DNA of 64,000 bases, from positions 186,001 through 250,000 of IMG/VR virus record IMGVR_UViG_3300005826_000294. One strand, 5' to 3'. Below are positions 29,464 through 46,767 of the stretch, one piece after another. A program made the position numbers and the translations under genes. The notes beneath the pieces were generated by a model. It saw nothing but the letters and a program-made list of their open reading frames with translations. It did no database searches and had not been told where the DNA came from. Numbering within the stretch: the stretch's first letter is position 1; every line of letters begins with the position of its first letter.

Positions 29464-32400
29464 CTATTCCAGATCTTTTCTGCGTTCTTTATCTATTCTA
29501 GAAGCATCCATTTGTTTTTTATTTAAAATAATTGCTTTAATATTTTTTTTATTTTGAAAAACAGCCTTAGATAATCTATGATAACCATCAATTAATTTAC
29601 CTTTATATAATAATATTGGATAATTAAGAGAGACTTCTTTAATTCTTTTGAACTCTTCTTTATATTTCTTTGGATTATCTAATACAATTTTAGGAGTTAT
29701 ATTTTTACCCCAAGCATTATGATCCATATTCCATTCTAATGAATTAACAGACACATCTTCAGGTTTAATATTTTCAGTCAGTTCAATTAACATATCAACA
29801 GACCATTCTCCACTATCACTAGTATATGTTTGACCTGCTCTTTTAGATAATTTAAAATCAGCATTAGATTCTTTATATTCCATAATCATCCATTTATTTC
29901 CATCTGTTTTAAATAAATTATAAGTTCCTTTTTCTTTTTTACCATTTAATTTAAATACTATTTTGTTTTTAGTTGAACTTATCTCTTCATATGTGCCAGA
30001 ATCATGAATTTTTACATCACCTGATCCATAATTTCCTTTTTCTATTTTCCCTTCAAATTTATTATATGAAATAGGATGATTTTCAGTTTTCACAGCGAGC
30101 AATCTTTCTTTTCCATTTGGCAATTTATGTTTAGGAACAGCCCAAGAAGACATAGATCCTTCATCATTTTCCAAACGCAAATCATAATGATTTCCAGCCT
30201 TTAAAGCCTTATGATTTTGAATTACAAAACGATGTTTGTTTTTTTCTTCAAGTTTTCCTTCAGGTTCAGGTGTTTCATCAAAATTTCTTTTTTTCTTATA
30301 TTTTGATAGTGAATCAGCTCTTTTACTTAATTTAAAAGAAGACTTTTTCTTTAATTCTTCAAATCCTCTAACTAAATCTTCCATATATATTAACATTTCT
30401 TCTGGATCATCACCATAATTTTGAATATCCTCAAAGAACTCTCTAAGAAGTGCCTCGGACTCTGGATCTATATCTTTCTGATTCATAAGAGCACCGACCT
30501 TAGAAAAAATTTGATGATGCGTATCACTCTTATTTCTAATATTTCTAATATTAACAACAGGTTCTGGATTATATTTCCCAGGCATAATAAGAGCTTGAAC
30601 TAAAGCATATTCTCCAATTCCAAAAGAAGTATCATCATTATTAAGAGCAACATGATAAAAATCACTATACATAATCTCACCAGAAAGATTTTCATTAGGA
30701 TTTCTTTTAGCATATTCAACAAGTTTATTATTTAATGGAACAGGAGCAGTCCCATTTACCCAATTTGGATTGGTAATAAACTTCATATATCCAGGTGGTA
30801 TTTTCCAAAGACCAATAAATTTAAGAACTTTTGGTCTTATAGACGTATGAGATCTTAATGGTTGTTTTTTAGGATTACTTCTAGGAAGAGAAAAATCACT
30901 TCCACTTGGTGGTTTATAACTTCTATATGGATTATAAGAAGTAGATTCATGATGAGCTGGAACTAAATTACATTTAAAACCAAATGAAAGATCATCCTCA
31001 GAAATTTGATCTCCAATCTTAGTAATAAAGAAAGTTCCTGGACCATTTCCATAAATCCCATCTATTTTTTGATCAGATAAAATATCTTCCATATGATAAT
31101 ATTCAAACCAATCATCACGAGATTCCATCATCTTAGAAACCCAAGAATGAAGAGCTGGAATATAAACATTATCTACTTTATCTTTTGTTGTAATTTTTTC
31201 TGTAATATTCTTTTGTTCTATATTTCCATCTTTATCTGCTATAAAACCACTATTTATATTTATATCACCTAACCATGATATAAACATACCTGGATCTAAA
31301 TGAGATGTTTCTCCTAATGTCTCATACATAGAAAGAACACGTTGTTTTGATCCATTAATTTTTGATTTTTCTATTTTTTTAACAATTTCAGTAATTGGTT
31401 TCCCAAAATTTCTTTGAATATCAATTTGTTTAGAAAACCAATCATTATAGGAATTAATAGCAATTTTATGCTGATCATTAAATATTTTTGCCCCTAAGAC
31501 AGATAAATACATCATTGTTTTTTGTGTTAAGTTCTGTCTCATATTCGCTTCTTGATCAGCTTCAATTCCTCCTAATCCTTCTTCTTCTTCTACACCAAAT
31601 TCTTCTTTTCCTACTTGGTCCCACTTCATATGTTGCCAAGGTTCCCAAAAATATCCACCTTTTCTATTTAATCCTTTTCCTCTAGCACTTCTTAATGTAA
31701 ATTTTACATAATCATGCGGACAAATAAAAGGAACATCTAATAATTCATCAGGAGGAATTCGTTGAGGTAAAATGTTAGGTAAAGATTCATCTTCAGCACT
31801 CTGAGATGAACCTACAACAATACCAAATCTTTTTTGTAAAACTACTATTGCTTTCGCACCAGCTTCTGTTTTCCAAAATTCATGATTACGATCTAAAGCG
31901 GTCATTGGAACTCTATTTCCTGGGCATCCTGAATTCGGACACCAAGTGTGCCAATATGGAACTGGTTCAGACTGAACTTGTAAACTATATTGTTTTTTTT
32001 CTAAATTATTAAGATCAAGTTTTGAATGCCTAATATCAGTACTAAGAGATATAATAGATTGTTCATATTTTCTCTTTTTATCTTCAAGTTCTGGAGTTTG
32101 ATTTTCTCCTAATTGTTCTATAACTTCATTTAATTTTTCTTGTAATTTAAAAACATCATTCTGTTTTCTAGACACATAATTTTCAAGTTTGGTAATTTTA
32201 TCTTTATTTTCTTCATATACTCTTTTACAATCTTCACAATACCAACGTTTTACAGGACCTTTTTCTTTAGAAGGGACCATAGCATTATAAAAAACATCCT
32301 TACTTTGTCTTTTTTGTTTTCTTGATTTACAATAAGCACAAACAGGAATTCTTACTTCTTTATATCCCTTATCTTGTGCTATAATTTTAGATATTCTTCG

Positions 32401-35400
32401 TGATAATGATTTATATATATATCCACCAAGTGGAACACTCCCGCGAGGAGGATCAACTCTATATCCAAATGAAAAATAAGTATTTGCGAGGTCTGTGATT
32501 GCTTCATTAATTAAAGAGATATATGCTTTTGAACTTGGAAGATCTGTTATAGGAATACCTTTTATCAATAAATCAATATCTCCTTGATCAAACATGCCGA
32601 AAGGCATACTACCGACATCTCCTTTTCTACCAAGTTTTAATTGAGAACTATTATTATCAAACCATTTCTTTCCAACACCCATAATAATTGCTGGAAGAAC
32701 CCATTTTTGTGCTATTTCAGGATTTTTTTTTAATTCTTCCCAAGCATACGGATCTTGGAAAAGTTTTGTTAAAGAAGGTCCATCTTTCATATTATCTGGA
32801 GAAAATAAATCTTTGGCATTAGCAGACATAACTGGACGCTTAATTTCCTCAGAATTAAACCATCTACTTAATACTACTCCATCTTTATCTCTAGGAGGTT
32901 CTAACTTTTCTCCAAAAATGGGAATTTTTTCTTTTGTATCTTCTTCTTCGTCTTCTTCCTCTTCTTTATATTCAGAAAGAGCTTCTCCCCATAAATCTTC
33001 CTTTTCTTCATCTCCAAGGAGATCAGAAAAATCAACATCTTTTTTTTCTTCAACTTCTTCAATTTCTTCTGGTTTTACAACTTGTTTAAATCCAAAATAT
33101 TCAGGTCTCTTTTTTTTTAAAACTTCTTCCTGTTTTTTTTCAACTTCTTCCTGTTTTTTTTCAACTTCTTCCTGTTTTTTTTCAGGAACACTTTCTATAA
33201 ATTTATCAAGTTTTTCCTGCTCAGTTTCAATCTCTTCTGGTTCTTCCTCTTGAAACTCAGGATTTTGTTCTAAAAATTTCTTAACTTCTTCATCATCCTG
33301 ACTCTCAGCTATTTTCCATAATTGTTCAAGATTAATTGGACTTTTTTTTACAGATGTTTTTAATAAATTGTTTGAAATTATATGTATTAAATTTTCTGTT
33401 TGATCTTTAATAGATGTAAATATATTTCCAGATTTTTCTACTGGCAATCCTGTCCAAATTCCATTTGCCCTTTTAACTTTACCCACAACGTCTGGATTTC
33501 CTGTAATTTTTAATCCAGAAATTATATTTGATTCTGCACCTAATAAAACAGCATTATTAATCATACCTATTGGTTTGTTTTGTTTAACAAAACTTTTTAA
33601 TAAATCTTTGACTTCTTTGTTTTTAGAAAAATTACAAACATCTTCCCCGCCACATACAATAAGGGCATCATATTGTTTAGTATTAATATCTTTTATTTTT
33701 TTCGAATTTATTAATGTTCCTTCAACACCCTCAACAACATTAAAAGTAGATATAATATGTGATTTAAACCCATATTTATTTATAAATATATTTTGTGTAA
33801 TTAAGTATTCTTTTTCAGAACACCCTGTTGGAGGAACCAAAATTGCTATTTGAGCAAATTTAGCATTAAGCATTTCGATAAATTCTGGATCAGGTTCATC
33901 AAAACCCATCCATCTTCTTTTCTCCATATGCTTTTCTAATTGACGTTCTTTTTCATTTGACTTCCAGGCATCGGCTTTCCATTCGGAAGATGGCCAATCA
34001 ATTTGTTCAAACTGAAAATTTTTTATTTCATTTTCTTGAAGTATATTATTAAATCCTTTTTTTACAACATTAGGCAAATCTTGTAGATTTTTTTCACCAT
34101 AAAATTGTATATCTGCTGGTTCATCACCTTTATATATAAATATTCTTCCCCGCCATCCTTCATTAGTTATTTGTTTTATATTATTATGTTGTGCTAATTC
34201 AATATGACCAAAATATTGTTTCTCACGCTTTCCATTGTTTATATTAAGATGATATGTAAATTTATTATTAATTTCATCCCATAACCATATATATTCTTTA
34301 TTTATTTTAGACGCTTTTAAATAAGCTTTCTTTGAAATAAAATCATCTGCCGCATTATATGCTCCTTGCTGACTATATGGTTCTTGACCTTGAGATGGAG
34401 CAACTTGTATAATATTTCCCTCTGGAAATGGAATATCTCCATAATCATATTTATTTTCATGTAAAGGTGCATTATTATAATTGTTTTCTGCTGTGTCTTG
34501 TTCTCCACCTAAAATTTTTTTAATGTTCCCATTGTTTTCTCCAAATGACTCAGGAACACGAATACTACCTTTATTATGTAGAGTGCTCACATCAGATCTC
34601 ATTCCACTTCCTTTAACAACACCAGTAGTCACATCTTCCCATTTTTCATTTAAATTTGTTAAAAGATCTTTTAATTCTTCACGCAATTTATCTATGGATA
34701 TTTCACTCTTCAATTTAAACTCTACATGAATACCAGATCCTCCACTTTGAAAAATTGTAGGAGTAGTCCCATATTTCTCTTTTAATTTTGAAGATAATTC
34801 TCTAGCATATTTTTTAGCTTTTTCTAATGGATAATTACCATGAATATCTAAATCCACGAAACCAAGATCTGTTTTGTTTCCAAATACCTGGTGAAAAGAC
34901 AAAAGACGCCGTTTAACCCAATAAAAATAATTATTAGGGTTTTCATCATTATTAGGATTATCATTAGTTATTACTATTTCTTTATCATTATGATTTCTTT
35001 TTAATATGGTTTTATTTTTCCCAACTCCAAGATAAATTAATACAGGCTTCCCTTTAATACGAGACATTATTTTCTTTCTTACTTCTGGTTTTTCATAATG
35101 TTTCCTAATTTCTCCACGAGTTAGTTTTTTGTCTTTATCAATTAAAACTTCCGACATTTTTTCTTTATCATCATCGGCAGAACTTATATTAATTGGTTCA
35201 AATTCAATAATGACAAATCTTTTATCTGGACCAAAACGATCTTCTAAAGATTTAGCCATTCTTTCACCATATGCTTTATTTATTCTTGTGATACTCATAA
35301 CTCTTTTAGTAATTATCTTAATATCAGCAATATTAGCTCCAGAATAACTTTTACATTTAACTTTATCATCAGGATTTACATTAACATCTCCTGGCCTAAT

Positions 35401-38019
35401 CGTATATGTTCTTTTTCCACTTTTAATATCTTCAGCATATTGATCAGGAAAATATATTGTTCCATTTTCAGTATATTGAGCACATTTTACAAGAATATTC
35501 CTTAATTTAGCTTCGGAAGCAAGATTTTTATATTTATTTATAATTGTATTTGTAATTGCTTTAACAACCTCTTCTTCTGTAAAATCTTTTTCATATCTAG
35601 TTTTAAAATCTTCAATAATTTCATTCAAATGTTCTTTATACCATTCGAATTCTTTTAACATTTGAGGTAAATATTTAGCATTAAATCCTTTTAATGGATC
35701 TGCTTGGGTTGGTTCTTCTTCTGGAAAACTTTCAGCATTAATTAAAAACGCATATCGCTTATCCTGAAATCCTGCTAATCCACCTTCAATGATATTTGTA
35801 GGCAATCCAGTCATTTTTTGAATAACTCCATTTGCCCTTTGTAAATAATGAACATGTGCTGGACCAAAAGGTTTTCTACTACTCAAAAATCTTCTAACTC
35901 TATATGGACCACTACCATTAGCAATAGCCATAAGTTGATACATATTATAGGCACCAGGAACATTTGGATTGTATTCATATTTAATAACATCACTAACAAG
36001 CATTCTCATTTTGTTCATAAAATCTGATTTTGAAACCCAATCAGACAAGTTCTTTAAAGAACTATTATTTCTAACACTTTTACTAGAAAAAGATCTATAA
36101 AATTTAGCTGATGTATCTGGATGTTCCATAGAAGTTATTAGTTGAGCTAAAGCACTTTTAGCTACACTTGGTGTAATATAGGTATCAGCAACATTTTGAA
36201 GTCTTAATAAATTATTAGGAGTCGGTTTAAACCCATATTTATTCTCAAGTAAATCAATATCAAATTCTTTTCCAATATATCTATTACCAATTTTTTTTAC
36301 AATCCCAGGGACATTACCTCTTGGGTTCATTTTAATTGAAGTGCCCTCTCTTCTTTTTACAACTTTATTGGGATTTTGTTTTATAAACTCTTCCACAGAA
36401 TTTTTATCGACAGGGACATTTTTCCATATATTTTCTTTGCGTATATTACGCATATTTTTCTTCCACTCATTTGAAAGTTCCTCTAACTTTTTAGGATCTA
36501 TGCCAGTTGCCTGTTCAAGTTTTGGATTTTTAGAAAGCCATTTCATAAAATATGGACCATGAACTTGAGTCAAACCAAATGAATTTCCTGAATCTCCACG
36601 AATCCAACTTTTATTATTACTTTCAAGTTTAGACATAATTTTAAATCCAAGTTCTGGATCAAAATTTAAACTTGCAGGCACCTTTGGTTCTCTAACATGA
36701 ATTGGATTAACTTTTACTTGTGATTTTAATTCTATAAGCAATTTATCAGGAGTTAAAGCTTCCGCTCTTTTTGAAAGTTTAAAAGAATTCATAGCTTTAA
36801 CCACCTTAAAATTATCAATATTTTTAGAATGAAATTCATTCATCGTAGCATCTTGGGGTTTTTTATCATCACGAAATCTTACAAACTTTTGATGCCTTAA
36901 TCCTCCAGGAACTCTTTCCTGAAATCCAATTTCAATTACAAATTTTCCTTTTTTTAATTTATCTTTTATAATTTTCTCATTTTCTTCAGAAAAATTTCCT
37001 ATATCACTAATATGATATAATTTTCCTTCATAATATTGTCCAAATAATGCTTTTAAATTACCTTTATCTGTAGTTTCACAATCATAAACTACATAATCAT
37101 CACTATCAGATTTACCAACTCCACCCTTATATTTAAACATAATTCCAGATGGTTTTGGTTCATTTTCACCCTTTTCTTTATATTCATATGGTTGATCTTT
37201 TAATTTTAATACAATTCCTTCTCCACCAGATTTAACAGCATTATTCATTACATTTTCCCATTTAGAAAATGGATATTGTTTTGTTATTAATATAGTATCA
37301 GTAGGTTTTATAATATTTTGTAATATTTTTCTTCTTTCTGAAAAAGGTTTTTTAGTTATATTATTACCTTTATACCATAAAATATCATAAAGATGTAATT
37401 TAATTTTTCCAGGTAATTCTTTCATTTTTTCTATTGCTTTATCAGAATTACTACCAGCAATTGATGTAACTTTTCCAATATCTTGTTTATTATTATTCCA
37501 ATAAACTAATTCACCTTCTACTAATGTTCCATCTGGAAGAGATTTAAGACCCCCTATTAATTCTGGAAAATTATCTGTTTTTTCATCACCACGGCGACTA
37601 TATAATTTAACTTCTCCATTTGATTTTATAGCTTGAGCTTTCCATCCATCAAGTTTATCTTCTATAATTATATTGTCTTTATTATAATCTTTTAATAATT
37701 CATCTGGATCATTAATTTGCGATAAACGCATAAGTGCCTTTGGAGATACTGAATCTGATGCTTCATTTATAGAGATATTTTCTAATTCTTTAAGACGATT
37801 TTCCATTTTTTCTATTTTTTCAGTTATAAGTGATGAAAGAACTTCATTGCCTTCAGCTTTTTCCAATCTCTCTTTTGTTTTAGGCAATTCATTTTTTAAT
37901 AAATCTTTCTCACATTTTTCGCACATTCCATGCGTTTTAGTATCTTCACTGAAATCGTCTCTTTCTTCTGAAAATTGAAATTCCTTGCACCATGAACAAT
38001 AATGATCTATTTTTACCAT
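29464..38019 (-). CDS. 2851-aa polyprotein-like multi-enzyme: Zn finger, ATP-dependent DNA ligase, lytic transglycosylase-like, ASCH, LigD-type primase-polymerase, DJ-1/PfpI, sigma70-region-2-like + Zn ribbons, LigD 3'-phosphoesterase, ParB/Srx-like
   Basis: EDKLDG, EGELV, EGIVLK, RHQKFVRFRDDK; LES...GDSGNSFGLTQ; IKSGKRTYTIR; VDLD and SGGSGIH; YDALIVCGG; Y.KKRNF..TPEP, FVIQ.H.A...HYDLRLE, SWAVPK, G.YGSG; IDGYHRL. Confidence 0.85.
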   Translation of the reverse strand: MVKIDHYCSWCKEFQFSEERDDFSEDTKTHGMCEKCEKDLLKNELPKTKERLEKAEGNEVLSSLITEKIEKMENRLKELENISINEASDSVSPKALMRLSQINDPDELLKDYNKDNIIIEDKLDGWKAQAIKSNGEVKLYSRRGDEKTDNFPELIGGLKSLPDGTLVEGELVYWNNNKQDIGKVTSIAGSNSDKAIEKMKELPGKIKLHLYDILWYKGNNITKKPFSERRKILQNIIKPTDTILITKQYPFSKWENVMNNAVKSGGEGIVLKLKDQPYEYKEKGENEPKPSGIMFKYKGGVGKSDSDDYVVYDCETTDKGNLKALFGQYYEGKLYHISDIGNFSEENEKIIKDKLKKGKFVIEIGFQERVPGGLRHQKFVRFRDDKKPQDATMNEFHSKNIDNFKVVKAMNSFKLSKRAEALTPDKLLIELKSQVKVNPIHVREPKVPASLNFDPELGFKIMSKLESNNKSWIRGDSGNSFGLTQVHGPYFMKWLSKNPKLEQATGIDPKKLEELSNEWKKNMRNIRKENIWKNVPVDKNSVEEFIKQNPNKVVKRREGTSIKMNPRGNVPGIVKKIGNRYIGKEFDIDLLENKYGFKPTPNNLLRLQNVADTYITPSVAKSALAQLITSMEHPDTSAKFYRSFSSKSVRNNSSLKNLSDWVSKSDFMNKMRMLVSDVIKYEYNPNVPGAYNMYQLMAIANGSGPYRVRRFLSSRKPFGPAHVHYLQRANGVIQKMTGLPTNIIEGGLAGFQDKRYAFLINAESFPEEEPTQADPLKGFNAKYLPQMLKEFEWYKEHLNEIIEDFKTRYEKDFTEEEVVKAITNTIINKYKNLASEAKLRNILVKCAQYTENGTIYFPDQYAEDIKSGKRTYTIRPGDVNVNPDDKVKCKSYSGANIADIKIITKRVMSITRINKAYGERMAKSLEDRFGPDKRFVIIEFEPINISSADDDKEKMSEVLIDKDKKLTRGEIRKHYEKPEVRKKIMSRIKGKPVLIYLGVGKNKTILKRNHNDKEIVITNDNPNNDENPNNYFYWVKRRLLSFHQVFGNKTDLGFVDLDIHGNYPLEKAKKYARELSSKLKEKYGTTPTIFQSGGSGIHVEFKLKSEISIDKLREELKDLLTNLNEKWEDVTTGVVKGSGMRSDVSTLHNKGSIRVPESFGENNGNIKKILGGEQDTAENNYNNAPLHENKYDYGDIPFPEGNIIQVAPSQGQEPYSQQGAYNAADDFISKKAYLKASKINKEYIWLWDEINNKFTYHLNINNGKREKQYFGHIELAQHNNIKQITNEGWRGRIFIYKGDEPADIQFYGEKNLQDLPNVVKKGFNNILQENEIKNFQFEQIDWPSSEWKADAWKSNEKERQLEKHMEKRRWMGFDEPDPEFIEMLNAKFAQIAILVPPTGCSEKEYLITQNIFINKYGFKSHIISTFNVVEGVEGTLINSKKIKDINTKQYDALIVCGGEDVCNFSKNKEVKDLLKSFVKQNKPIGMINNAVLLGAESNIISGLKITGNPDVVGKVKRANGIWTGLPVEKSGNIFTSIKDQTENLIHIISNNLLKTSVKKSPINLEQLWKIAESQDDEEVKKFLEQNPEFQEEEPEEIETEQEKLDKFIESVPEKKQEEVEKKQEEVEKKQEEVLKKKRPEYFGFKQVVKPEEIEEVEEKKDVDFSDLLGDEEKEDLWGEALSEYKEEEEDEEEDTKEKIPIFGEKLEPPRDKDGVVLSRWFNSEEIKRPVMSANAKDLFSPDNMKDGPSLTKLFQDPYAWEELKKNPEIAQKWVLPAIIMGVGKKWFDNNSSQLKLGRKGDVGSMPFGMFDQGDIDLLIKGIPITDLPSSKAYISLINEAITDLANTYFSFGYRVDPPRGSVPLGGYIYKSLSRRISKIIAQDKGYKEVRIPVCAYCKSRKQKRQSKDVFYNAMVPSKEKGPVKRWYCEDCKRVYEENKDKITKLENYVSRKQNDVFKLQEKLNEVIEQLGENQTPELEDKKRKYEQSIISLSTDIRHSKLDLNNLEKKQYSLQVQSEPVPYWHTWCPNSGCPGNRVPMTALDRNHEFWKTEAGAKAIVVLQKRFGIVVGSSQSAEDESLPNILPQRIPPDELLDVPFICPHDYVKFTLRSARGKGLNRKGGYFWEPWQHMKWDQVGKEEFGVEEEEGLGGIEADQEANMRQNLTQKTMMYLSVLGAKIFNDQHKIAINSYNDWFSKQIDIQRNFGKPITEIVKKIEKSKINGSKQRVLSMYETLGETSHLDPGMFISWLGDININSGFIADKDGNIEQKNITEKITTKDKVDNVYIPALHSWVSKMMESRDDWFEYYHMEDILSDQKIDGIYGNGPGTFFITKIGDQISEDDLSFGFKCNLVPAHHESTSYNPYRSYKPPSGSDFSLPRSNPKKQPLRSHTSIRPKVLKFIGLWKIPPGYMKFITNPNWVNGTAPVPLNNKLVEYAKRNPNENLSGEIMYSDFYHVALNNDDTSFGIGEYALVQALIMPGKYNPEPVVNIRNIRNKSDTHHQIFSKVGALMNQKDIDPESEALLREFFEDIQNYGDDPEEMLIYMEDLVRGFEELKKKSSFKLSKRADSLSKYKKKRNFDETPEPEGKLEEKNKHRFVIQNHKALKAGNHYDLRLENDEGSMSSWAVPKHKLPNGKERLLAVKTENHPISYNKFEGKIEKGNYGSGDVKIHDSGTYEEISSTKNKIVFKLNGKKEKGTYNLFKTDGNKWMIMEYKESNADFKLSKRAGQTYTSDSGEWSVDMLIELTENIKPEDVSVNSLEWNMDHNAWGKNITPKIVLDNPKKYKEEFKRIKEVSLNYPILLYKGKLIDGYHRLSKAVFQNKKNIKAIILNKKQMDASRIDKERRKDLE

Positions 38020-39581: not shown

Positions 39582-39831
39582 TATCTTTGTGCCTCCGATC
39601 TAATTTATAACTGGCTCGTTTTTCGTTTATAATTATATCGTTATAAATACCTCTTAATAATTGAACCATTGATCTATCTGATTTTAATTTATCTTCCCAA
39701 ATATATAATGATTTTTTAACTTCATTAATTAATTCTTTGGCTTTTTGAATTTCTCCATTTTTAAGTAATCTTTTTATATTAGTATGATATAATTGGCAGT
39801 TTTTGCGAAACTCAATATATGAACGATCCAT
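39559..39831 (-). CDS. Hypothetical protein
   Basis: In operon between portal and 508-aa gene. Confidence 0.5.
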   Translation of the reverse strand: MDRSYIEFRKNCQLYHTNIKRLLKNGEIQKAKELINEVKKSLYIWEDKLKSDRSMVQLLRGIYNDIIINEKRASYKLDRRHKDNDHSEND

Positions 39832-39833
39832 TA

Positions 39834-42800
39834 TTATACTCCTGCTCCAGGTCCAAGAGGTGGTGGAGTCATTCCGCCACCTTCAGCACCACCACCGCCT
39901 ACCATTTCACCAGGTGGTGGTGCTAGTTCAGGAAGACCACCAGGAGCCACTCCACCCATTCCTCCCGTTCCTCCCATTCCTAAATCTCCACCAGCTTCAG
40001 GAGGTGTCATTTGACTCCTTTCTTTACTATCAATTGGTTCCATAATAGGCTTCTCAGGATCAAGAGATCTTAATTCTGTTAAACTCATTCCAGATAAAGA
40101 GTTTTCTTCTCTCATTTTTATTGCCTTATCAATTGCTTCTCTTCTCATTTTTATTTTTTCATCTTCATAAGATATTCCCAAACTCTTATAAAGAGATTGA
40201 ACAGAAGCCTGCCCAGCACTAACCATTCCTGTTATATTACTAATATAATCCTGTAAATCATATAAATTCATTTGGTTCCATTCAATTTCTGGAACAATTA
40301 AATGTTTTTCTTTATTCCTGTATTCATAGAAACCTTGAATTTCACTAATGGGAGCAAATATCTTATTTATAAGCCATCTAGCAATCATATTACGAAAATT
40401 AAAATATCTTTGTCTTAAAACTTCTAATCCAATTGATGCTGAAGAGTATACAGCACTTTCAGTATCTATAACTGCAGGGGGAACCATTAATCCTGTATAA
40501 ATATTTTTAGTAATAAATTCAAGATCACTAGCAATATCTAATACTTGACCAGAAAATCCTACCCTCTCTACAGTTACACCAGCATGAGTTATAATTTTAG
40601 CATCTTTATCATATTGCGCTTCTTCAAACATTTGTCTATAAAACTCTAAATCTTCTTGAGTTGCCCTATATTCTCCTTCAGTATTTCCACCAACTTTAAT
40701 TAGTGTAACAGGATTAATCATACCATCTGCTTGAGCAAATTTGCTATTTCCCTGGATAGTCATTAATCCATTATTTCTAGTGATAAAAAGACCATTTGAA
40801 ACTTCAAAACAAAATACCCTTCCATTATAAGGAATTTTTTCAATTGAAGCTCCATTGTAATTATTATTTCCATAAATTACTGGTTCTTTTCCATAATTTG
40901 AATCAGACCAAGTAATTAAATAAAATTCTTTACCATATCCATTTTTATCTACTATTAAATGAGGAGCATATCCACACTTAAATACTATCTCTTGAATATC
41001 ATCAGCAAGCCTCTTTGAAATAGTATTATAACGATATGCTGTTGATCCATTTTTATATTTACTTTCAATCTCAGAACCATCCCCTTTAACCAAAGCATTT
41101 AATAATATTTTTAACAATCTTGGAGACAATTGCTTCGTCCAAAAAGGAACATGTTTATTTCCAGAACCATATCCTATTTCATTCATAAAATGTTCAGCAA
41201 TTATTTTTCTAGAAATAGACCAAGTTGTAATATCATTGTTAGATGAATATCCTTGTTTATTTGCCGAAACATATTCTCCACAATGTAAATTAAGCATATC
41301 TGCTATTTTTATTATAGATTTTTTAATATACTTATAATCCTTAGAGTTGTTATTTTGGCATATACTAATTTTATAATTTTGAGTTTTATTATTATAATGA
41401 ATACAACCTTCAGAAATCATATATCCAAGAAATTCTAAATAGTCTTCTATAGGAATTTTTTGATCAAATAAATTAATATTAGATATTTCTTTTCCCACAT
41501 ATTTATCAATAGAGGCTTTTGATTTATAAAAACATCCTTTTTTAACATCCTCAGCTCTTACAAACTGAAAATCATTATATCCATTATAATGTGTCTTTTT
41601 CTTCGCTAACCACATTCTATGATTTGGAGTAACCATAATATCTATTTTTTTTCCATAGAAATGATATAATTCTCCATTAAATTCATAATCCGTACGATTA
41701 ATATATTTTTGAAACTCTAATTCTCCAGTTTCTTGATTCATTGTTGCTATTTCATCGTTTTTAGAAATATCATCATAAAACTTAAAACCATCTTTTGTCA
41801 ATACCTCAGTAGATACCGGGAAACATTCTCTTAACTTATCATAAAGCATTAGGTCTTTAAAAACGCTAACAATAATACTTGTTCCTCTTACATCATATGG
41901 ACTTGATAATATTTTTAAATGGGAAATGTTAAAATTATCTAATGGAATATCTTGTCCTGCTCTAATATGATATAAAATTTTCTCTGGGATTTGTTTTCTA
42001 AGTTGAGAATCAGCAGGATTATTGCTAAACACTAATCGTTGAAGAACAGCATCAGGTTTTAATGTAATAATAGGATCACCAGAGAGAACCGTCTTTTTAA
42101 CATGAACATAATCAGGATTTTGTATTACAATTTTTGACCATTTTCCTGTATTTTCATTAAGTTCGGCAAATGGAAAACAATTATGTACTGCCACTCCATT
42201 TGCCACATATGAATGATCATCTTCAACTTCAATATCATACATAAAGTTTTCATTAAATTTATTAGTTATATCTTCAACTTTCTTTATACTTAACATTTGC
42301 CAATTTTTATAAAGACTAGAATTAGGAGAACACCATTTTGTCTCTCTTAATAAATCATTCTTATTAGTTTTTAAATATGTTTTAAATTTATATGATTCAT
42401 TCGCAACTATCTTAATTCTATATTTATCAGATATATTATCTTTAGCATTAATTTTTGAACAAGTTGGATGAATACCTAATCTTCTTAACATAAGTGTAAA
42501 CTGATTAGCAAGATTTTTGGAAGAAGTAGAAATAATAATATGACCATTGCTTTGATCAATACAACCATCACCATCTATAAAACCAGCTAATAAATGTTTT
42601 TGTAATTCAATAGGCAAAGACATTATTGTCTCGCTTAATTGTTTTTCTTTACTATATTCTCCACAATGCTCCATAAAAAACTCTGCTATTTTATGACCAT
42701 TGCGTTTTTTACTTCTTAATAAATGATCACATTTATTAGAGTTTCTACTCACATATGTTGTTCCAGAAAATCCAAAACATTTTTTTAATAAAGGAGAAAG

Positions 42801-44042
42801 ATTATCATCTATAAATTTTTTATCATAACTTGTAAATTTTATTCCATCATAATCTTTTTTAGATTTACAATAACACCCCTCAGCAAGCCAAAATCCCATA
42901 ATATAACATAATTCTGAATTAAAATTATCTTCTTCATCAGAATTAAATGGAGAATATACTATATCATTAATTTTAATATTATTTGTTTCAATAAATTCTG
43001 GACTAATATCTCTATTATGTATTTTTCTACAATTACTACATTGTTTTCTTCTTGGAAGAATTCTAATTTTTTTATTATTACATGAAGGAGTATCACATTT
43101 AATATTATCTAAACTAGTATGTAAAATTGGATGTTTTCCACTTATAATTAATGATTCAGGAAGACCAACAACAGAAATTTTATAAACTTTTAAATGTTCT
43201 TCTTTAACAACATTTGTAGGTTTGATAAATTTATTAATTACTTTCTTTTTATTTCCTAAATGGGTTAGAACAATATCACCTATTTCTATTTCAGCTATAG
43301 GCTTTACAGATCCATCCGCCATAGTAATTAAAGAAGATCCTTTTATTTTTTCACCTAACTTCCAATATTCTAAAGAAATATCCGAAAGAGCACTGACTAA
43401 GTCCATTTCTTCAATCATAGTTTCAAAAAAATCTAAAACTCTCTTATCTTGACATTTTAAATTCAATTTACTAATTGGATATGTTGAATGAAGAGTAATG
43501 GCATTTCTAACTATAGGATGAAGTTGAAAAAAGTTTCTGCACCAAGCATTAATTGTTAATTTATCTCTAGGCAAATTAAGATTTGCCATAGTAAATAAAG
43601 GACTATATACTTCTGGAGCCAAACGTTCATATGAAGACCCTGCTGAGGTCCCAACACCAACAGAACCAACTCCCGAAGATCCTAATGTGGATTGTTTAAT
43701 TAAAGTACTTGCTTTTAAAACTTCTTTTTCTATATGAGAGGCACTATGAACAATAGCACCAACAGCATTAGAGGTTTCTCGTGAAGAATAACTCCTACCA
43801 TCGGATCCTGGAAGCCAAGCACTCCTTTTTAATCCTTCATCATCCAAAGAAGCATTATGAATATTTTGAGGCATCTTGTTTAATCTACTACTTTCATAAC
43901 TTAACCCTTCCTTAATTAAACCTCTCTCAATATCACTTTCAATACTTGCTTTACGATATTCGGTCAGTCCAGATGCTCTCTTTGGATTTATTCTTAATTG
44001 CTCTTCTGAAGTTTTTGGTCTAGAACCTCTTTTAACTATCAT
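39834..44042 (-). CDS. Portal protein with two inteins (652 aa after splicing)
   Basis: Directly downstream of terminase; exteins HPIVRNAITLH, EYWKLGE|CFPFAEL, IQNPDYV, RGTSII..VFKDL, LRE|SKFAQADG..NP. Confidence 0.8.
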   Translation of the reverse strand: MIVKRGSRPKTSEEQLRINPKRASGLTEYRKASIESDIERGLIKEGLSYESSRLNKMPQNIHNASLDDEGLKRSAWLPGSDGRSYSSRETSNAVGAIVHSASHIEKEVLKASTLIKQSTLGSSGVGSVGVGTSAGSSYERLAPEVYSPLFTMANLNLPRDKLTINAWCRNFFQLHPIVRNAITLHSTYPISKLNLKCQDKRVLDFFETMIEEMDLVSALSDISLEYWKLGEKIKGSSLITMADGSVKPIAEIEIGDIVLTHLGNKKKVINKFIKPTNVVKEEHLKVYKISVVGLPESLIISGKHPILHTSLDNIKCDTPSCNNKKIRILPRRKQCSNCRKIHNRDISPEFIETNNIKINDIVYSPFNSDEEDNFNSELCYIMGFWLAEGCYCKSKKDYDGIKFTSYDKKFIDDNLSPLLKKCFGFSGTTYVSRNSNKCDHLLRSKKRNGHKIAEFFMEHCGEYSKEKQLSETIMSLPIELQKHLLAGFIDGDGCIDQSNGHIIISTSSKNLANQFTLMLRRLGIHPTCSKINAKDNISDKYRIKIVANESYKFKTYLKTNKNDLLRETKWCSPNSSLYKNWQMLSIKKVEDITNKFNENFMYDIEVEDDHSYVANGVAVHNCFPFAELNENTGKWSKIVIQNPDYVHVKKTVLSGDPIITLKPDAVLQRLVFSNNPADSQLRKQIPEKILYHIRAGQDIPLDNFNISHLKILSSPYDVRGTSIIVSVFKDLMLYDKLRECFPVSTEVLTKDGFKFYDDISKNDEIATMNQETGELEFQKYINRTDYEFNGELYHFYGKKIDIMVTPNHRMWLAKKKTHYNGYNDFQFVRAEDVKKGCFYKSKASIDKYVGKEISNINLFDQKIPIEDYLEFLGYMISEGCIHYNNKTQNYKISICQNNNSKDYKYIKKSIIKIADMLNLHCGEYVSANKQGYSSNNDITTWSISRKIIAEHFMNEIGYGSGNKHVPFWTKQLSPRLLKILLNALVKGDGSEIESKYKNGSTAYRYNTISKRLADDIQEIVFKCGYAPHLIVDKNGYGKEFYLITWSDSNYGKEPVIYGNNNYNGASIEKIPYNGRVFCFEVSNGLFITRNNGLMTIQGNSKFAQADGMINPVTLIKVGGNTEGEYRATQEDLEFYRQMFEEAQYDKDAKIITHAGVTVERVGFSGQVLDIASDLEFITKNIYTGLMVPPAVIDTESAVYSSASIGLEVLRQRYFNFRNMIARWLINKIFAPISEIQGFYEYRNKEKHLIVPEIEWNQMNLYDLQDYISNITGMVSAGQASVQSLYKSLGISYEDEKIKMRREAIDKAIKMREENSLSGMSLTELRSLDPEKPIMEPIDSKERSQMTPPEAGGDLGMGGTGGMGGVAPGGLPELAPPPGEMVGGGGAEGGGMTPPPLGPGAGV
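40746..41825 (-). mobile_element. Intein 2 of portal (360 aa) with LAGLIDADG
   Basis: CFPVSTEVLTKDG ... TPNH ... LGYMISEG ... LVKGDG ... VFCFEV ... QGN|S. Confidence 0.9.
42180..43349 (-). mobile_element. Intein 1 of portal (390 aa) with LAGLIDADG; first residue Lys
   Basis: KIKGSSLITMADG ... SGKH ... GFWLAEG ... AGFIDGDG ... MYDIEV.DDHSYVANGVAVHN|C. Confidence 0.85.
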
Positions 44043-44053
44043 ACTATACTCCT

Positions 44054-45892
44054 TTAAAAATTCTTAGGTATATAAGCCAATACTGGTTTTGGAAATACTG
44101 AATTACTAGGTGTTTCTACATTAACTTTAAATCCTCTTGTTTTATCAAACTTATATGCTAAATATGCATACATTAAAGCCATAAGTCCATCATTCTGTAT
44201 TTTTCCTTTAATATATGTTTGATGAGGTTGCCCATGTCTCATAACAACTTTGCTCTCCATAGAACAACAATGAGCAACTAACCAAGAAATAGATTCATAA
44301 CTCGCCCAAGGAAAACGAAATCTACCTTTCCTTAATAATTCAAACATTTCTCCAATTATTTTATCTTTATCAATAACAACTTCTAATAAATCTCTATCAT
44401 ATTTTTGTCCGCCAGAAACCATACCAGAACTTCTAACAGATTTATATCTATCACCATAAATCCTTTTTAGCTCAATTGTAATATCATCGGCAAAACCAAT
44501 ATCGCCCATAGCACTTCTTACACCATATAAACGAAACATATTATCTACAAAAGACATTTTGCCTTGAATATCAAGTACTTTTAATTTTTTAGCAAATTCA
44601 ATTACAAATCTTTCATCATGTTCAACAGATAATATAACTCCACATGAAAATGATTGACCACGTTTAATTCCATCTATATCTGGTTTTCCTCCCCAGTCAC
44701 ATCCTAAATATACAACTTTTGACTCTCTATCTATATATTTAGACATAAATCTAGTAACATCTCTACTTGTTTGATATATTTCTTCTCTGGAAATCGGCAT
44801 TCCAGCTCCAGAATGAAACTCTCCTAAAACTTCATTATTATAAATCATTTCAGAATTTCTTGGATTATTTTCAGGTTTTTCTTTTAATATTATTTCTTTA
44901 GTAAAATTTGGAATAAGTAGTTGATTAAAATGAAATCCAACATAATCACAATCTTCTCTTCCAGGAGTTACTATCCATTTTCCTCGTTCAACAGCATGAA
45001 CTTTCTCTTGTTCACAGTTACAACTTGGACATTTCACAATATTCTCATATAACCATATATCTTTTTCCCACTTATCTGATCCAGGTGTATATAAAAGAAA
45101 ATATTTTCCGCAATCTTGACAACCTAAATAATAACGCCTCTGATCAGATGATTCCCAAAGTCTATGAAAAAATGTGCCTTTTTGTCTTGGAGTCCCAAAA
45201 TATACCTGAGTTCCACCAGGTTGAGGACCATATTGAGCATGAGTTAAACACTTAATAGTCTTGGCAATCGCAACTTCAGACATGTCTTGAACCTCATCAA
45301 AAAAACATACATCAAAAGTACGACCCAGAACTCTTGTCCCTTCATTTCCAATAGATTCACACCATAAAACATTTCCATGTTTAAATTGCTTATAATATAA
45401 ACTATCTGTTGAATCACGAAGACTATTCTTTTGAGCCTGTATATATGGTTTAAGTTTTCCAGGATGACGTGTATCATTGAAATCTTGTATTGGAGAAGAC
45501 TCCATAATCATTTTTTCTAATTTATCTTTAGAAAAGCCATGCATCATGTCTAAATGTGGAAAAGCATGTGTAACCCTTACAGGAGGAGTTCCACTAACAC
45601 CAAACATTCCACTCGCTACCATATATAATTCTAAAGCTGAAGCCATTACTGTTGCACCAACCTGCCTACCTTTTACAATAACAATAGGTTTTCCTTTTGA
45701 AGACATTGCTACTGTAACAATATGACGATATATATCAGCAATAAATTTCCAACCATTATTTGTTAATCTAAATGGTTTTCCATCTAAAGTTAAAAATGAC
45801 TCCGCAAAAGAAACGGGATCTACTTTTAAAAATTCCCGTTTTAAAGATATGAAACTATTTTCTGGAGTCCAATCTGAAAGATCACTCGCCAT
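44054..45892 (-). CDS. terL: Terminase large subunit (gpA-like); start at 45892 (TAATG overlap)
   Basis: KGRQVGAT Walker A, CFFDEVQD Walker B, FGTP, CQDC/CPSC Zn finger, YLGCDWGG and QNDGLMA nuclease motifs. Confidence 0.9.
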   Translation of the reverse strand: MASDLSDWTPENSFISLKREFLKVDPVSFAESFLTLDGKPFRLTNNGWKFIADIYRHIVTVAMSSKGKPIVIVKGRQVGATVMASALELYMVASGMFGVSGTPPVRVTHAFPHLDMMHGFSKDKLEKMIMESSPIQDFNDTRHPGKLKPYIQAQKNSLRDSTDSLYYKQFKHGNVLWCESIGNEGTRVLGRTFDVCFFDEVQDMSEVAIAKTIKCLTHAQYGPQPGGTQVYFGTPRQKGTFFHRLWESSDQRRYYLGCQDCGKYFLLYTPGSDKWEKDIWLYENIVKCPSCNCEQEKVHAVERGKWIVTPGREDCDYVGFHFNQLLIPNFTKEIILKEKPENNPRNSEMIYNNEVLGEFHSGAGMPISREEIYQTSRDVTRFMSKYIDRESKVVYLGCDWGGKPDIDGIKRGQSFSCGVILSVEHDERFVIEFAKKLKVLDIQGKMSFVDNMFRLYGVRSAMGDIGFADDITIELKRIYGDRYKSVRSSGMVSGGQKYDRDLLEVVIDKDKIIGEMFELLRKGRFRFPWASYESISWLVAHCCSMESKVVMRHGQPHQTYIKGKIQNDGLMALMYAYLAYKFDKTRGFKVNVETPSNSVFPKPVLAYIPKNF

Positions 45893-46767
45893 TATTTTCC
45901 CCATTTATATACAACTTTAAATCCAGCGTCTTCAAAAATTTTAAGCTTTTTTATAGTATTGTCATATAATTCTCCAAAAGTTTTTCCAATTATAGGATGT
46001 TTATCATTTCTATTGTATTTATCTGGATGTCCATGCCAAAAGTATCCAAAATATTCATAAATAATATTGTTTGTTTTATCAAACCCATCAACAAAAAATT
46101 TTTTATTGTTAATATTAATATAAACTTCTGTTTGAATAATTCCAATACTTTCAATCCATTTTTTACCTGATTTTGATATTCTTTTAGAACATAAAGAACA
46201 TCCTCTTCCACGAACTCTATCTTTTATTTTCGCTATCCATTTATGATTATTTTTACATTTCCAATGGACTACTTTATGACTTCCAGGTCTTACAGAATCA
46301 GGTTTAAAATTTTTTTCATCCCATTCTTTTGATAAAGTAGGATATAAATCTTTTAAAGAATTCCCATATCCTACTTTTCTACCATTACAATAAGGACAAT
46401 TACTATTTTTTCTATGTTTTACAGATTTTTCCCAAGAATGCCCAAATTTACATTTCCACCATACTTTTTTATAACTTCCTGAACTAATACATTCAGGATC
46501 AATAATATTTTTATCATAATCCCACTCTTTTAATAAATTACTATAAATTATTGAATCTTCTTTGGAAATTTTTACTCTAGTACAGTATGGACAACCATGG
46601 CCTTTGATTCTACTATAAACAATTGCTTCCCATTTATGATTGTTTTTACAAATCCATTTAATTCTTGATCTACTAACTAAAGATGTTATATCATAATTAT
46701 TACTTAAATCATATTCTTTTAATAGTTCAGGATATTCATTTAAGTTTATCATTAATTCTTTGAACAT
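45892..46767 (-). CDS. Free-standing putative endonuclease: three DUF4379-like repeats + Vsr/EDxHD-like nuclease
   Basis: KEWD...W.C...H.W...CP.C; VDGFD....IYEYFGYFWHG. Confidence 0.75.
   Translation of the reverse strand: MFKELMINLNEYPELLKEYDLSNNYDITSLVSRSRIKWICKNNHKWEAIVYSRIKGHGCPYCTRVKISKEDSIIYSNLLKEWDYDKNIIDPECISSGSYKKVWWKCKFGHSWEKSVKHRKNSNCPYCNGRKVGYGNSLKDLYPTLSKEWDEKNFKPDSVRPGSHKVVHWKCKNNHKWIAKIKDRVRGRGCSLCSKRISKSGKKWIESIGIIQTEVYININNKKFFVDGFDKTNNIIYEYFGYFWHGHPDKYNRNDKHPIIGKTFGELYDNTIKKLKIFEDAGFKVVYKWGK

What the first reader, a model, noticed from the sequence alone, without database searches (positions are those of the whole stretch)
42180..43349. Portal intein that starts with lysine
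Seen: block A aligns as K1-I-K-G-S-S-L-I-T-M-A-D12-G13, in exact register with C1-F-P-V-S-T-E-V-L-T-K-D12-G13 of the second intein; exteins read EYWKLGE|CFPFAEL; C-terminus is HN|C and block F has Asp (MYD), not the class 3 Cys. Established: canonical inteins need Cys/Ser at position 1; class 2 (KlbA, Ala1) and class 3 (F-block Cys, WCT motif) bypass it. Inference: as portal is essential, this may be a splicing-competent class 2-like intein with an unreported Lys1, or a read/assembly error.
Basis: partly seen in the sequence, partly recalled or inferred. Interest (0 to 1): 0.72.

Follow-up and report, generated by a model that had tools for sequence, protein, structure and literature searches.

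The report
Phage portal intein starting with lysine
The only portal gene of this roughly 300-kb phage is interrupted by a self-splicing protein element that begins with lysine instead of the usual cysteine or serine; the lysine is real and conserved in a whole clade of metagenomic relatives, which probably splice by a rare shortcut so far known only from one archaeal intein family.

Summary
The portal ORF (39834-44042, minus strand, 1402 aa) carries two inteins. Intein 1 is exactly aa 232-621 (window 42180-43349). Removing both inteins in silico gives a 652-aa protein that aligns without gaps across both junctions with the Bacillus phage G portal.

Forty-five full-length inteins from independent metagenomes sit at the same LGE| site. 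Position 1 is K in 20, R in 6, S in 4, A in 2 and C in 13; one further member has M. Lys is encoded by AAA or AAG and Arg by CGG or CGA, at dS of about 1 or more and dN/dS 0.16-0.27.

The main non-Cys1 group (31 sequences) forms one clade nested among Cys1 inteins of the same site. One Ala1 lineage lies apart.

All non-Cys1 members keep Ser/Thr B:7, His B:10, Asp F:4, the block F His, His-Asn and Cys+1. All Cys1 relatives have Asn at F:4. No WCT triplet and no conserved internal Cys is present, and mini-intein derivatives keep the splicing blocks.

Best reading: a splicing-competent, class-2-like intein in which Cys+1 attacks the N-junction directly. It arose independently of the archaeal KlbA inteins. 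I found no report of it in the literature searched. The mechanism is inferred, not shown.

The parts
39834..44042 (-). Portal gene, 1402 aa including two inteins; the only portal gene in the 301,683-bp virus record
   Evidence: ORF and translation. PHROG portal family phrog_16240 hits all three extein pieces. 35-44% identity to Bacillus phage G portal. Only one portal locus in G000.
43350..44042 (-). N-extein, aa 1-231, ending ...LEYWKLGE
   Evidence: Aligns with phage G portal up to LEYWKLGD. Glu-1 is invariant in 45 homologues.
42180..43349 (-). Intein 1, aa 232-621 (390 aa): Hint splicing domain, Cys4 zinc-ribbon-like insert and LAGLIDADG homing endonuclease
   Evidence: Pfam. AF2 model with pLDDT 90. 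Foldseek and VIA matches to TliVMA, PI-PfuI and PI-SceI inteins. Exact boundaries.
43347..43349 (-). Codon AAA = Lys1 of intein 1 (K232), at the position of the usual Cys1/Ser1 nucleophile
   Evidence: Sequence. In the model it superposes on residue 1 of solved inteins. K in 20 of 45 family members, R in 6. Codons AAA x7 and AAG x1 in 8 loci.
43311..43349 (-). Block A (N1): KIKGSSLITMADG
   Evidence: Asp12-Gly13 are nearly invariant in the clade.
43119..43151 (-). Block B (N3): LIISGKHPILH, with Ser B:7 (S301), His B:10 (H304) and Ile at B:12 (no Trp)
   Evidence: His304-Pro305 are invariant in all 45.
43029..43097 (-). CX4C...CX2C zinc-ribbon-like insert after block B
   Evidence: Cys316 and Cys335 are invariant in the 32 non-Cys1 members and present in 6 of 13 Cys1 members. 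The insert is lost in P0043 and P0044, so it is not the splicing nucleophile.
42558..42908 (-). LAGLIDADG endonuclease core between motif 1 (GFWLAEG, aa 379-391) and motif 2 (LAGFIDGDG, aa 484-495)
   Evidence: Pfam LAGLIDADG_3 at E 3.7e-24. The acidic residues Glu388 and Asp492 are conserved in 31 of 32. dN/dS is 0.24-0.40.
42195..42245 (-). Block F (C2): FMYDIEVEDDHSYVANG, with Asp F:4 (D603, 42234-42236) and the block F His (H610)
   Evidence: Asp in 32 of 32 non-Cys1 members, Asn in 13 of 13 Cys1 members.
42177..42194 (-). Block G (C1): VAVHN|C, with Val G:5, His G:6, Asn G:7 (N621) and Cys+1 (C622, TGT at 42177-42179)
   Evidence: H, N and C are invariant in all 45.
41826..42179 (-). Middle extein, aa 622-739 (CFPFAELNE...YDKLRE)
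40746..41825 (-). Intein 2, aa 740-1099 (360 aa): Cys1 ... Gly-Asn|Ser, a standard class 1 layout but without the penultimate His
   Evidence: Pfam Hint. Boundaries from the ungapped alignment with phage G portal.
39837..40745 (-). C-extein, aa 1100-1402
44054..45904 (-). Terminase large subunit (gpA-type ATPase) directly upstream; it places the portal in a packaging module
   Evidence: Pfam GpA_ATPase at E 7.7e-16. The same neighbour is seen in homologous loci.

Best explanation
Intein 1 is a functional, mobile LAGLIDADG intein of a jumbo-phage portal gene. It has lost the N-terminal nucleophile and most likely splices by the class 2 route.

Proposed route (inferred, not shown):
1. The thiol of Cys+1 (C622) attacks the Glu231-Lys232 peptide bond directly. 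The bond is activated by Ser301 (B:7) and His304 (B:10), and Asp603 (F:4) activates the thiol. This gives the branched thioester in one step.
2. Asn621 cyclises, helped by His620 and His610, and releases the intein.
3. An S-to-N acyl shift joins ...LEYWKLGE to CFPFAELNE....

Lys1 is not a nucleophile. A basic residue is preferred at position 1 (K or R in 26 of the 32 full-length non-Cys1 inteins) but is replaceable by S, A or M. It may pair with Asp F:4 or Glu-1, or help stabilise the tetrahedral intermediate; that part is speculation.

The clade arose from Cys1 inteins resident at the same portal site, together with an Asn-to-Asp change at F:4. It is therefore independent of the archaeal KlbA inteins.

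Shown here: sequence, boundaries, fold, conservation, covariation, selection and phylogeny. Inferred: that it splices, and by which chemistry.
For: 1. Exact boundaries. Phage G portal reads LEYWKLGD-VFPFGQLNE, and the in-silico spliced product aligns ungapped across both junctions. The PHROG portal profile runs on from position 162 to 165 across the insertion.

2. Fold. The AF2 model has pLDDT 90. K232 superposes on residue 1 and N621 on the last residue of PI-SceI, PI-PfuI, 2cw7 and Mtu RecA inteins, with Z 18-30.

3. Not an error.
- 45 full-length inteins sit at the same site in separate assemblies, with position 1 K20, R6, S4, A2 and C13.
- K, A and M also occur in mini or degraded derivatives.
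- Position-1 codons are AAA x7, AAG, CGG, CGA, TCG, AGT and GCC.

4. Selection. dN/dS is 0.16-0.27 in the splicing domain at dS of about 1 or saturated. His B:10, Asp F:4, the block F His, His-Asn and Cys+1 are invariant in all 32 non-Cys1 members.

5. Mini-inteins. They keep all splicing blocks although the endonuclease is lost: P0139 (K1, 183 aa) and P0044 (A1, 140 aa).

6. Covariation.
- Every non-Cys1 member has Asp at F:4, and every Cys1 member at this site has Asn.
- In related inteins at other sites Cys1 goes with Asn 90 times and with Asp 15 times.
- Asp F:4, His B:10 and Thr B:7 are the residues reported as required in class 2 inteins (PMC4031507).

7. Phylogeny. The main non-Cys1 group is monophyletic (31 tips, SH-aLRT 97) and nested within Cys1 inteins of the same site. 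The Ala1 lineage (P0031) is separate.

8. No class 3 signature. B:12 is Ile, F:4 is Asp and G:5 is Val. No internal Cys is conserved across all non-Cys1 members.

9. Need for splicing. This is the only portal gene in the 301-kb record, so phage viability needs splicing.

10. Contrast within the genome. The other inteins of the same genome start with Cys or Ser.
Against: - No experiment shows splicing.
- Standard inteins cannot splice once residue 1 is replaced by a non-nucleophile, and it is not understood why KlbA can (PMC2807308 and PMC4031507). Sequence alone therefore cannot prove direct attack.
- This intein has His, not the KlbA-type Ser, at G:6, and a bulky charged residue, not Ala, at position 1.
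- The covariation rests on only two independent lineages.
- Ser1 members nested in the clade could work as class 1.
- I could not obtain model coordinates, so the distances between Cys+1, Lys1, Asp F:4 and the scissile bond are unknown.
- The virus record is about 75% complete, so a second portal gene cannot be strictly excluded.
- No reads cover the codon in this very sample.
Confidence: 0.62

Rival explanations
1. The intein splices, but through a nucleophile other than Cys+1. This would be a class-3-like or new route using an internal Ser, Thr or Cys, for example Ser/Thr at B:7 or the invariant Thr260-His261 pair. Alternatively, catalysis in which Lys/Arg1 plays an essential chemical part.
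For: Thr260-His261 (intein positions 29-30) and Ser/Thr B:7 are invariant. A basic residue is kept at position 1 in 26 of the 32 full-length non-Cys1 inteins. Position 1 changes about three times more slowly than an average site: at least 4 changes on a tree of about 12 substitutions per site.
Against: Thr-His and B:7 are equally conserved in the Cys1 relatives, so they are not a compensating novelty. No internal Cys is shared by all non-Cys1 members: P0044 has a single, non-conserved Cys, and P0043 lost the ribbon. The WCT triplet is absent. S, A and M at position 1 in otherwise intact members argue against an essential chemical role for Lys. The one substitution that tracks loss of Cys1 is Asn to Asp at F:4, the class 2 requirement.
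Confidence: 0.15
2. The intein does not splice. It is either a decaying element, or it only cleaves (for example Asn cyclisation at the C-junction), so that the portal works unspliced or as non-covalent pieces.
For: Non-conservative replacement of residue 1 abolishes splicing in standard inteins (PMC2807308). [quoted passage not shown]
Against: There is one portal gene in the record. The insertion lies inside the most conserved portal motif. The N-junction residues His B:10 and Asp F:4 are invariant across a clade with saturated synonymous change, and dN/dS is about 0.2. Mini-inteins keep all four blocks. The clade is large and found in many samples. Decay would not fix Asp at F:4 in 32 of 32 members.
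Confidence: 0.12
3. Codon 232 is a sequencing or assembly error, or the true intein start lies elsewhere, for example at Ser236 or Ser237.
For: No reads of the source sample could be laid over 43340-43355. The codon lies in an A-rich stretch (GAA AAA ATA AAA).
Against: The same Lys occurs in at least 22 other assemblies, with AAA or AAG, in contexts without the A-run. Turning AAA into a Cys or Ser codon needs 2-3 substitutions. The frame is intact on both sides. Intein-free homologues put the junction exactly at E|C. Positions 5 and 6 are not conserved as Ser/Thr: P0017 reads KLSGLAYL. The structural alignment puts K232 on residue 1 of solved inteins.
Confidence: 0.01

Closest known systems
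Class 2 inteins (Methanocaldococcus jannaschii KlbA intein and its archaeal orthologues)
   Same: No Ser, Cys or Thr at position 1. No WCT triplet. Cys+1 present. Thr/Ser B:7, His B:10 and Asp F:4 present, the three residues reported as required for class 2 splicing (PMC4031507). C-terminal Asn.
   Different: Lys (or Arg/Ser/Ala/Met) instead of Ala at position 1. His instead of Ser at G:6. Carries a LAGLIDADG endonuclease and a zinc-ribbon insert. The host is a phage portal protein, not KlbA. Its nearest relatives are Cys1 inteins of the same portal site, so it is not a KlbA orthologue but an independent loss of the nucleophile. Its best structural matches are class 1 inteins.
Class 1 LAGLIDADG inteins at the same portal LGE|C site and related sites (for example P0032, P0042, P0130; solved relatives TliVMA, PI-PfuI, PI-SceI)
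   Same: Same insertion site, same domain layout, and 30-42% identity. Same blocks A, B, F and G, His-Asn|Cys end, and LAGLIDADG motifs.
   Different: They start with Cys and have Asn at F:4. The window's clade starts with K/R/S/A and has Asp at F:4, Met at F:2, and Lys274 and Asn615 nearly fixed.
Class 3 inteins (mycobacteriophage Bethlehem DnaB intein type)
   Same: Phage-borne. Non-nucleophilic residue at position 1 (Pro, Ala and others).
   Different: Class 3 is defined by Trp B:12, Cys F:4 and Thr G:5, with Cys F:4 as the first nucleophile (PMC2807308). Here these positions are Ile, Asp and Val. Class 3 inteins mostly have Ser or Thr at +1 and sit in helicase or terminase P-loops.
Arthrobacter sp. 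FB24 Arth_1007 intein (Gly1, WDT)
   Same: Lacks both the N-terminal nucleophile and the block F Cys. It was once proposed as a class 2 candidate (PMC2807308).
   Different: It was later described as a pseudogene with only 66 extein residues (PMC3196547, abstract). Here the host gene is intact, single-copy, and the clade is under purifying selection.

Membership tests
Intein (Hint-fold protein-splicing element) | Hint fold with blocks A, B, F and G | tested here: met
   Pfam Intein_splicing, Hint-type and LAGLIDADG_3 hits. AF2 pLDDT 90. Z 18-30 to solved inteins over the model range 11-400.
Intein (Hint-fold protein-splicing element) | In-frame insertion whose precise removal restores a conserved host-protein motif | tested here: met
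   LEYWKLGE|...|CFPFAELNE against phage G LEYWKLGDVFPFGQLNE. The alignment of the in-silico spliced product is ungapped. Intein-free alleles read GE[ATVC]FP[YF].
Intein (Hint-fold protein-splicing element) | C-terminal Asn (or Gln/Asp) followed by Cys, Ser or Thr at +1 | tested here: met
   His620-Asn621|Cys622, invariant in 45 of 45.
Intein (Hint-fold protein-splicing element) | Excision with ligation of the exteins, shown experimentally | not testable with these tools
   Only indirect evidence: purifying selection, a single portal gene and mini-inteins.
Class 1 inteins | Cys or Ser at position 1 to make the linear (thio)ester | tested here: not met
   Lys232 (AAA). It occupies the structural place of residue 1.
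Class 2 inteins (KlbA type) | No Ser, Thr or Cys at position 1 | tested here: met
   Lys1. In the clade K, R, A and M occur, and also S in 4 members.
Class 2 inteins (KlbA type) | No WCT triplet (Trp B:12, Cys F:4, Thr G:5) | tested here: met
   Ile306, Asp603 and Val619.
Class 2 inteins (KlbA type) | Cys at +1 | tested here: met
   Cys622 (TGT). Cys in 32 of 32 non-Cys1 members.
Class 2 inteins (KlbA type) | Thr B:7, His B:10 and Asp F:4 present (required for KlbA splicing; PMC4031507) | tested here: met
   Ser301 (Thr in the Arg1 subclade), His304 and Asp603. His and Asp are invariant in the 32 non-Cys1 members.
Class 2 inteins (KlbA type) | [quoted passage not shown] | tested here: not met
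   Host is a phage portal. Lys1 and His G:6. The nearest relatives are Cys1 portal inteins. KlbA is not among the 50 best structural matches.
Class 2 inteins (KlbA type) | Branched intermediate formed by direct attack of Cys+1 on the N-junction amide | not testable with these tools
   Needs biochemistry: Cys+1 mutants, trapping of the intermediate, thiol sensitivity.
Class 3 inteins | WCT triplet with Cys F:4 as obligate nucleophile | tested here: not met
   F:4 is Asp in 32 of 32. No internal Cys is conserved across all non-Cys1 members.
LAGLIDADG homing endonuclease (double-motif, intein-borne) | Two LAGLIDADG motifs with a conserved acidic residue each | tested here: met
   GFWLAEG (Glu388) and LAGFIDGDG (Asp492). 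Pfam E 3.7e-24. Conserved in 31 of 32. Fold matches I-DmoI and PI-SceI.

The most novel reading that the evidence does not exclude
The Lys/Arg1 plus Asp F:4 portal inteins represent a second, independent invention of nucleophile-free initiation of protein splicing. In the most novel reading they form a fourth mechanistic variety: the basic residue at position 1, paired with Asp F:4, takes an active part in activating the scissile bond or Cys+1, and so differs from the sterically explained KlbA route.
Probability: 0.15. Interest if true: 0.85.

Novelty: new variant of a known kind. Interest (0 to 1): 0.72.

Why it matters
According to the literature read here (PMC2807308, PMC4031507), class 2 splicing is known only from KlbA orthologues (five were known in 2009). 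Class 2 and class 3 are each thought to have arisen once, and why class 2 inteins can attack an amide directly while class 1 inteins cannot is still open.

This clade would be a natural second origin of that ability.
- It has close Cys1 sister inteins at the same site.
- One substitution, Asn to Asp at F:4, tracks the switch without exception.
- A 183-aa mini-intein version exists.

Together these form a ready comparative system for asking what makes direct attack possible.

It also shows that intein-detection rules requiring Cys, Ser or Ala at position 1 will miss or misannotate real inteins in phage metagenomes. If the inteins are active, they add Lys1/Arg1 scaffolds to the protein-engineering toolbox.

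Tried and rejected
- **Reads over the codon.** One public run (an estuary metatranscriptome, Logan contigs) holds only 42343-42536 and 39800-40084, so it says nothing about 43347-43349.
- **Near-identical DNA in GenBank phages.** None found. A tblastn of the junction region against cultured phages gave only one unrelated weak hit, so no isolate is available.
- **IMG/VR scan.** It gave only four close loci, L003-L006; the rest were inteins at other sites.
- **Representative-library search.** It added few members at this site, but it supplied about 110 related inteins at other sites as a background set.
- **Alternative intein start at Ser236 or Ser237.** Rejected: those positions are not conserved, and the structure puts K232 at residue 1.
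- **Zinc-ribbon cysteines as a class-3-like nucleophile.** Rejected: the ribbon also occurs in Cys1 relatives and is lost in P0043 and P0044.
- **Frameshifting on the A-run GAAAAAAT.** Rejected: the run is absent in homologues.
- **Model geometry.** Distances around Lys1 could not be measured, because no coordinates are returned.
- **Copy number in a second Lys1 genome.** L004's record is not held. L005's record is only 34% complete; it shows one portal.
- **Literature.** Five full-text searches found no intein reported with Lys at position 1 and no class 2 intein outside KlbA. The library lacks most subscription journals.

Full report
**What is there**

The window is bases 186001-250000 of a 301,683-bp IMG/VR virus record. 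On the minus strand, directly downstream of a gpA-type terminase large subunit (44054-45904), lies a 1402-aa ORF at 39834-44042. Three of its pieces match portal families (phrog_16240). They are 35-44% identical to the portal of Bacillus phage G.

Two insertions interrupt these pieces.
- Intein 1 is aa 232-621, window 42180-43349. These are exactly the coordinates of the finding.
- Intein 2 is aa 740-1099, window 40746-41825.

Pfam finds LAGLIDADG_3 (E 3.7e-24), Intein_splicing (E 3.5e-9) and Hint in the ORF.

**Check of the observation**

- The N-extein ends LEYWKLGE.
- The intein starts KIKGSSLITMADG, with AAA at 43347-43349.
- Block B is LIISGKHPILH.
- Block F is FMYDIEVEDDHSYVANG.
- The intein ends VAVHN, followed by CFPFAELNE.

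The insertion point is fixed to the residue. Phage G portal reads LEYWKLGD-VFPFGQLNE. When both inteins are removed in silico, the 652-aa product aligns with the 648-aa phage G protein without any gap at either junction. The PHROG portal profile runs on from position 162 to 165 across the insertion. Many intein-free metagenomic portals read ...LGE[A/T/V/C]FP[Y/F]....

An AlphaFold2 model of aa 222-631, built on 45 homologues, has mean pLDDT 90. Its best matches are intein homing endonucleases: TliVMA, 2cw7, PI-PfuI and PI-SceI, with Z 21-30. Mini-inteins match at about Z 18. In these alignments model residue 11 (K232) is paired with residue 1 of the solved inteins, and model residue 400 (N621) with their last residue. 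Lys therefore sits where Cys1 or Ser1 normally sits.

**Not an error**

A search of 5.8 billion proteins returned portals from many separate assemblies (JGI, ENA, NCBI, Logan) with an intein at the same site.

Among 45 full-length inteins at LGE|, position 1 is K in 20, R in 6, S in 4, A in 2 and C in 13. Further members have K (P0139), A (P0044) and M (P0043).

In 15 loci read at the DNA level, position 1 is encoded as follows:

| Residue | Codons |
|---|---|
| Lys | AAA x7, AAG x1 |
| Arg | CGG, CGA |
| Ser | TCG, AGT |
| Ala | GCC |
| Cys | TGC x2 |

Neighbouring codons differ freely at synonymous positions. Pairwise dS is about 0.9-1.8 or saturated. dN/dS is 0.16-0.27 in the splicing domain and 0.24-0.40 in the endonuclease domain.

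The single public run found covers only 42343-42536 and 39800-40084. This no longer matters.

The A-run around the codon is absent in homologues, so no slippage signal is involved.

**The family**

A maximum-likelihood tree, built without the position 1 and F:4 columns, puts 31 non-Cys1 inteins in one clade (SH-aLRT 97). The clade is nested among Cys1 inteins of the same site.
- One subclade of 5 has Arg1.
- One subclade of 26 is Lys-dominated. Within it, Arg1 (once), Ser1 (twice, with different codon families) and Ala1 (from Ser1) are derived.
- One Ala1 lineage (P0031, and the similar P0044) lies apart on a long branch.

In the Lys subclade, position 1 changed at least 4 times on a tree of about 12 substitutions per site. 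Lys is therefore favoured but not essential.

All 32 non-Cys1 members keep the following:
- Ser/Thr at B:7 and His-Pro at B:10-11;
- Asp at F:4 and the block F His;
- His-Asn at the C-terminus and Cys+1;
- both LAGLIDADG acidic residues, in 31 of 32.

Three derivatives have lost or degraded the endonuclease but keep all four splicing blocks: P0139 (K1, 183 aa), P0044 (A1, 140 aa) and P0043 (M1, 317 aa). This is the usual sign that splicing stays under selection after homing has ceased.

**The covariation**

F:4 is Asp in all 32 non-Cys1 members and Asn in all 13 Cys1 members at this site. The extra loci and mini-inteins follow the same rule.

In about 110 related inteins at other sites, nearly all starting with Cys, F:4 is Asn 90 times and Asp 15 times. 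Asn is therefore the family norm, and Asp came in with the loss of Cys1.

Only two independent lineages support this, so it is suggestive rather than statistically strong.

Met at F:2, Lys274 and Asn615 are also nearly fixed in the non-Cys1 group.

**Mechanism**

The literature read here states four relevant points (PMC2807308; PMC4031507).
- Class 1 inteins need Cys1 or Ser1.
- Class 3 inteins have the Trp B:12 / Cys F:4 / Thr G:5 triplet.
- Class 2 inteins lack both. They let Cys+1 attack the N-junction amide directly, and they require Thr B:7, His B:10 and Asp F:4.
- All known class 2 inteins are KlbA orthologues with Ala1 and Ser G:6, and class 2 and class 3 are each thought to have arisen once.

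The window's intein has Ile, Asp and Val at the WCT positions. No internal Cys is conserved across all non-Cys1 members. The CX4C...CX2C ribbon after block B also occurs in Cys1 relatives and is lost in P0043 and P0044. A class-3-type route is therefore excluded on conservation grounds.

What remains is the class 2 route.
1. Cys622 attacks the Glu231-Lys232 bond, activated by Ser301, His304 and Asp603.
2. Asn621 cyclises.
3. An S-to-N shift joins the exteins.

This is inference from sequence. No step has been shown.

The preference for Lys or Arg may reflect a salt bridge to Asp F:4 or Glu-1, or help with the tetrahedral intermediate. I could not measure this, because model coordinates are not returned.

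**Rivals**

- Splicing through another nucleophile, or with an essential role for Lys (0.15). The invariant Thr260-His261 and Ser/Thr B:7 could be candidates, but they are just as conserved in the Cys1 relatives. S, A and M at position 1 argue against an essential Lys.
- A non-splicing or cleavage-only element (0.12). This is hard to square with a single portal gene in the record, insertion in the most conserved portal motif, invariant N-junction residues at saturated dS, and the mini-inteins. It cannot be excluded without an assay. The record is about 75% complete.
- Read error or misplaced boundary (0.01). Refuted as described above.

**Comparison and novelty**

The intein works like a class 2 intein on every feature testable in silico. 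It fails the membership feature 'KlbA orthologue, Ala1, Ser G:6'. Its relatives are class 1 portal inteins.

I therefore file it as a new variant of a known kind: a class-2-like, non-KlbA clade with Lys or Arg at position 1, arisen independently in jumbo-phage portal genes.

Five full-text searches found no report of an intein beginning with Lys or of class 2 inteins outside KlbA. The library lacks most subscription journals, so absence of a report is not proof. No cultured phage in the GenBank phage set carries the element.

**Verdict**

The mechanism is inferred with moderate confidence (0.62). Interest is 0.72.

Noticed in passing
window 40746-41825 (-): Intein 2 of the portal (aa 740-1099) starts with Cys but ends Gly-Asn|Ser. 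It lacks the usual penultimate His (G:6). The boundaries fit phage G portal without a gap.
   Followed up: partly
window 43029-43097 (-): A CX4C...CX2C zinc-ribbon-like insert lies between block B and the endonuclease domain of intein 1. It is invariant in the 32 full-length non-Cys1 inteins, present in 6 of 13 Cys1 relatives, and kept in the Lys1 mini-intein P0139. It may be a DNA-recognition module.
   Followed up: partly
G000:C1 73313-74377, about 41800-42140 and about 256290-256547 (outside the window; loci L094, L095, L097): The same phage record carries at least three more inteins. They sit in a GDP-mannose-dehydratase-like gene (Ser1...HN|T), a ribonucleotide reductase (Cys1...LN|C) and a DnaE-type polymerase (Cys1...HN|S). 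Several free-standing LAGLIDADG ORFs are also present. All three of these inteins start with a standard nucleophile.
   Followed up: partly
window 29464-38019 (-): A single 2851-aa ORF combines an ATP-dependent DNA ligase domain, a weak LigD primase-polymerase match, a DJ-1/PfpI domain and a LigD 3'-phosphoesterase domain. This is an unusually large fused DNA-repair protein for a phage.
   Followed up: no
window 22748-25801 (-): A 1017-aa ORF fuses a type IB topoisomerase catalytic core with a 2'-5' RNA ligase/LigT-like domain and a weak tyrosine-phosphatase match.
   Followed up: no
window 45892-46767 (-) and 25791-27233 (-): Two ORFs are made of 3 and 5 repeats of the DUF4379 treble-clef zinc-finger domain (E 7e-46 and 3e-87).
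   Followed up: no
L089:1-199 and L092:1-197 (relatives' loci): In some relatives the terminase gene just upstream of the portal carries its own intein (Intein_splicing plus LAGLIDADG_2). The window's terminase (616 aa) has none.
   Followed up: no
P0209:173, P0150:181, P0189:153 (proteins from the representative search): Related inteins at another site (...SMG|) also lack Cys1. Two begin ASRGHDLVT... (Ala1, ending HN|C). One begins FLSMYADIT... (apparently Phe1, with Tyr-Asp in block F and HN|C). Further nucleophile-free inteins may exist outside the portal site.
   Followed up: partly
window 42343-42536 and 39800-40084: Contigs of an estuary metatranscriptome run are identical to these two stretches, which lie in the endonuclease part of intein 1 and at the 3' end of the portal gene. 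The phage or a near-identical one is therefore present in that sample. Transcription is not shown.
   Followed up: partly
P0006 (= L004, 243,788-bp contig): NCBI lists this Lys1-intein portal as 'LAGLIDADG family homing endonuclease' of a Patescibacteria MAG. It is probably a mis-binned jumbo-phage contig and a mis-named portal.
   Followed up: no
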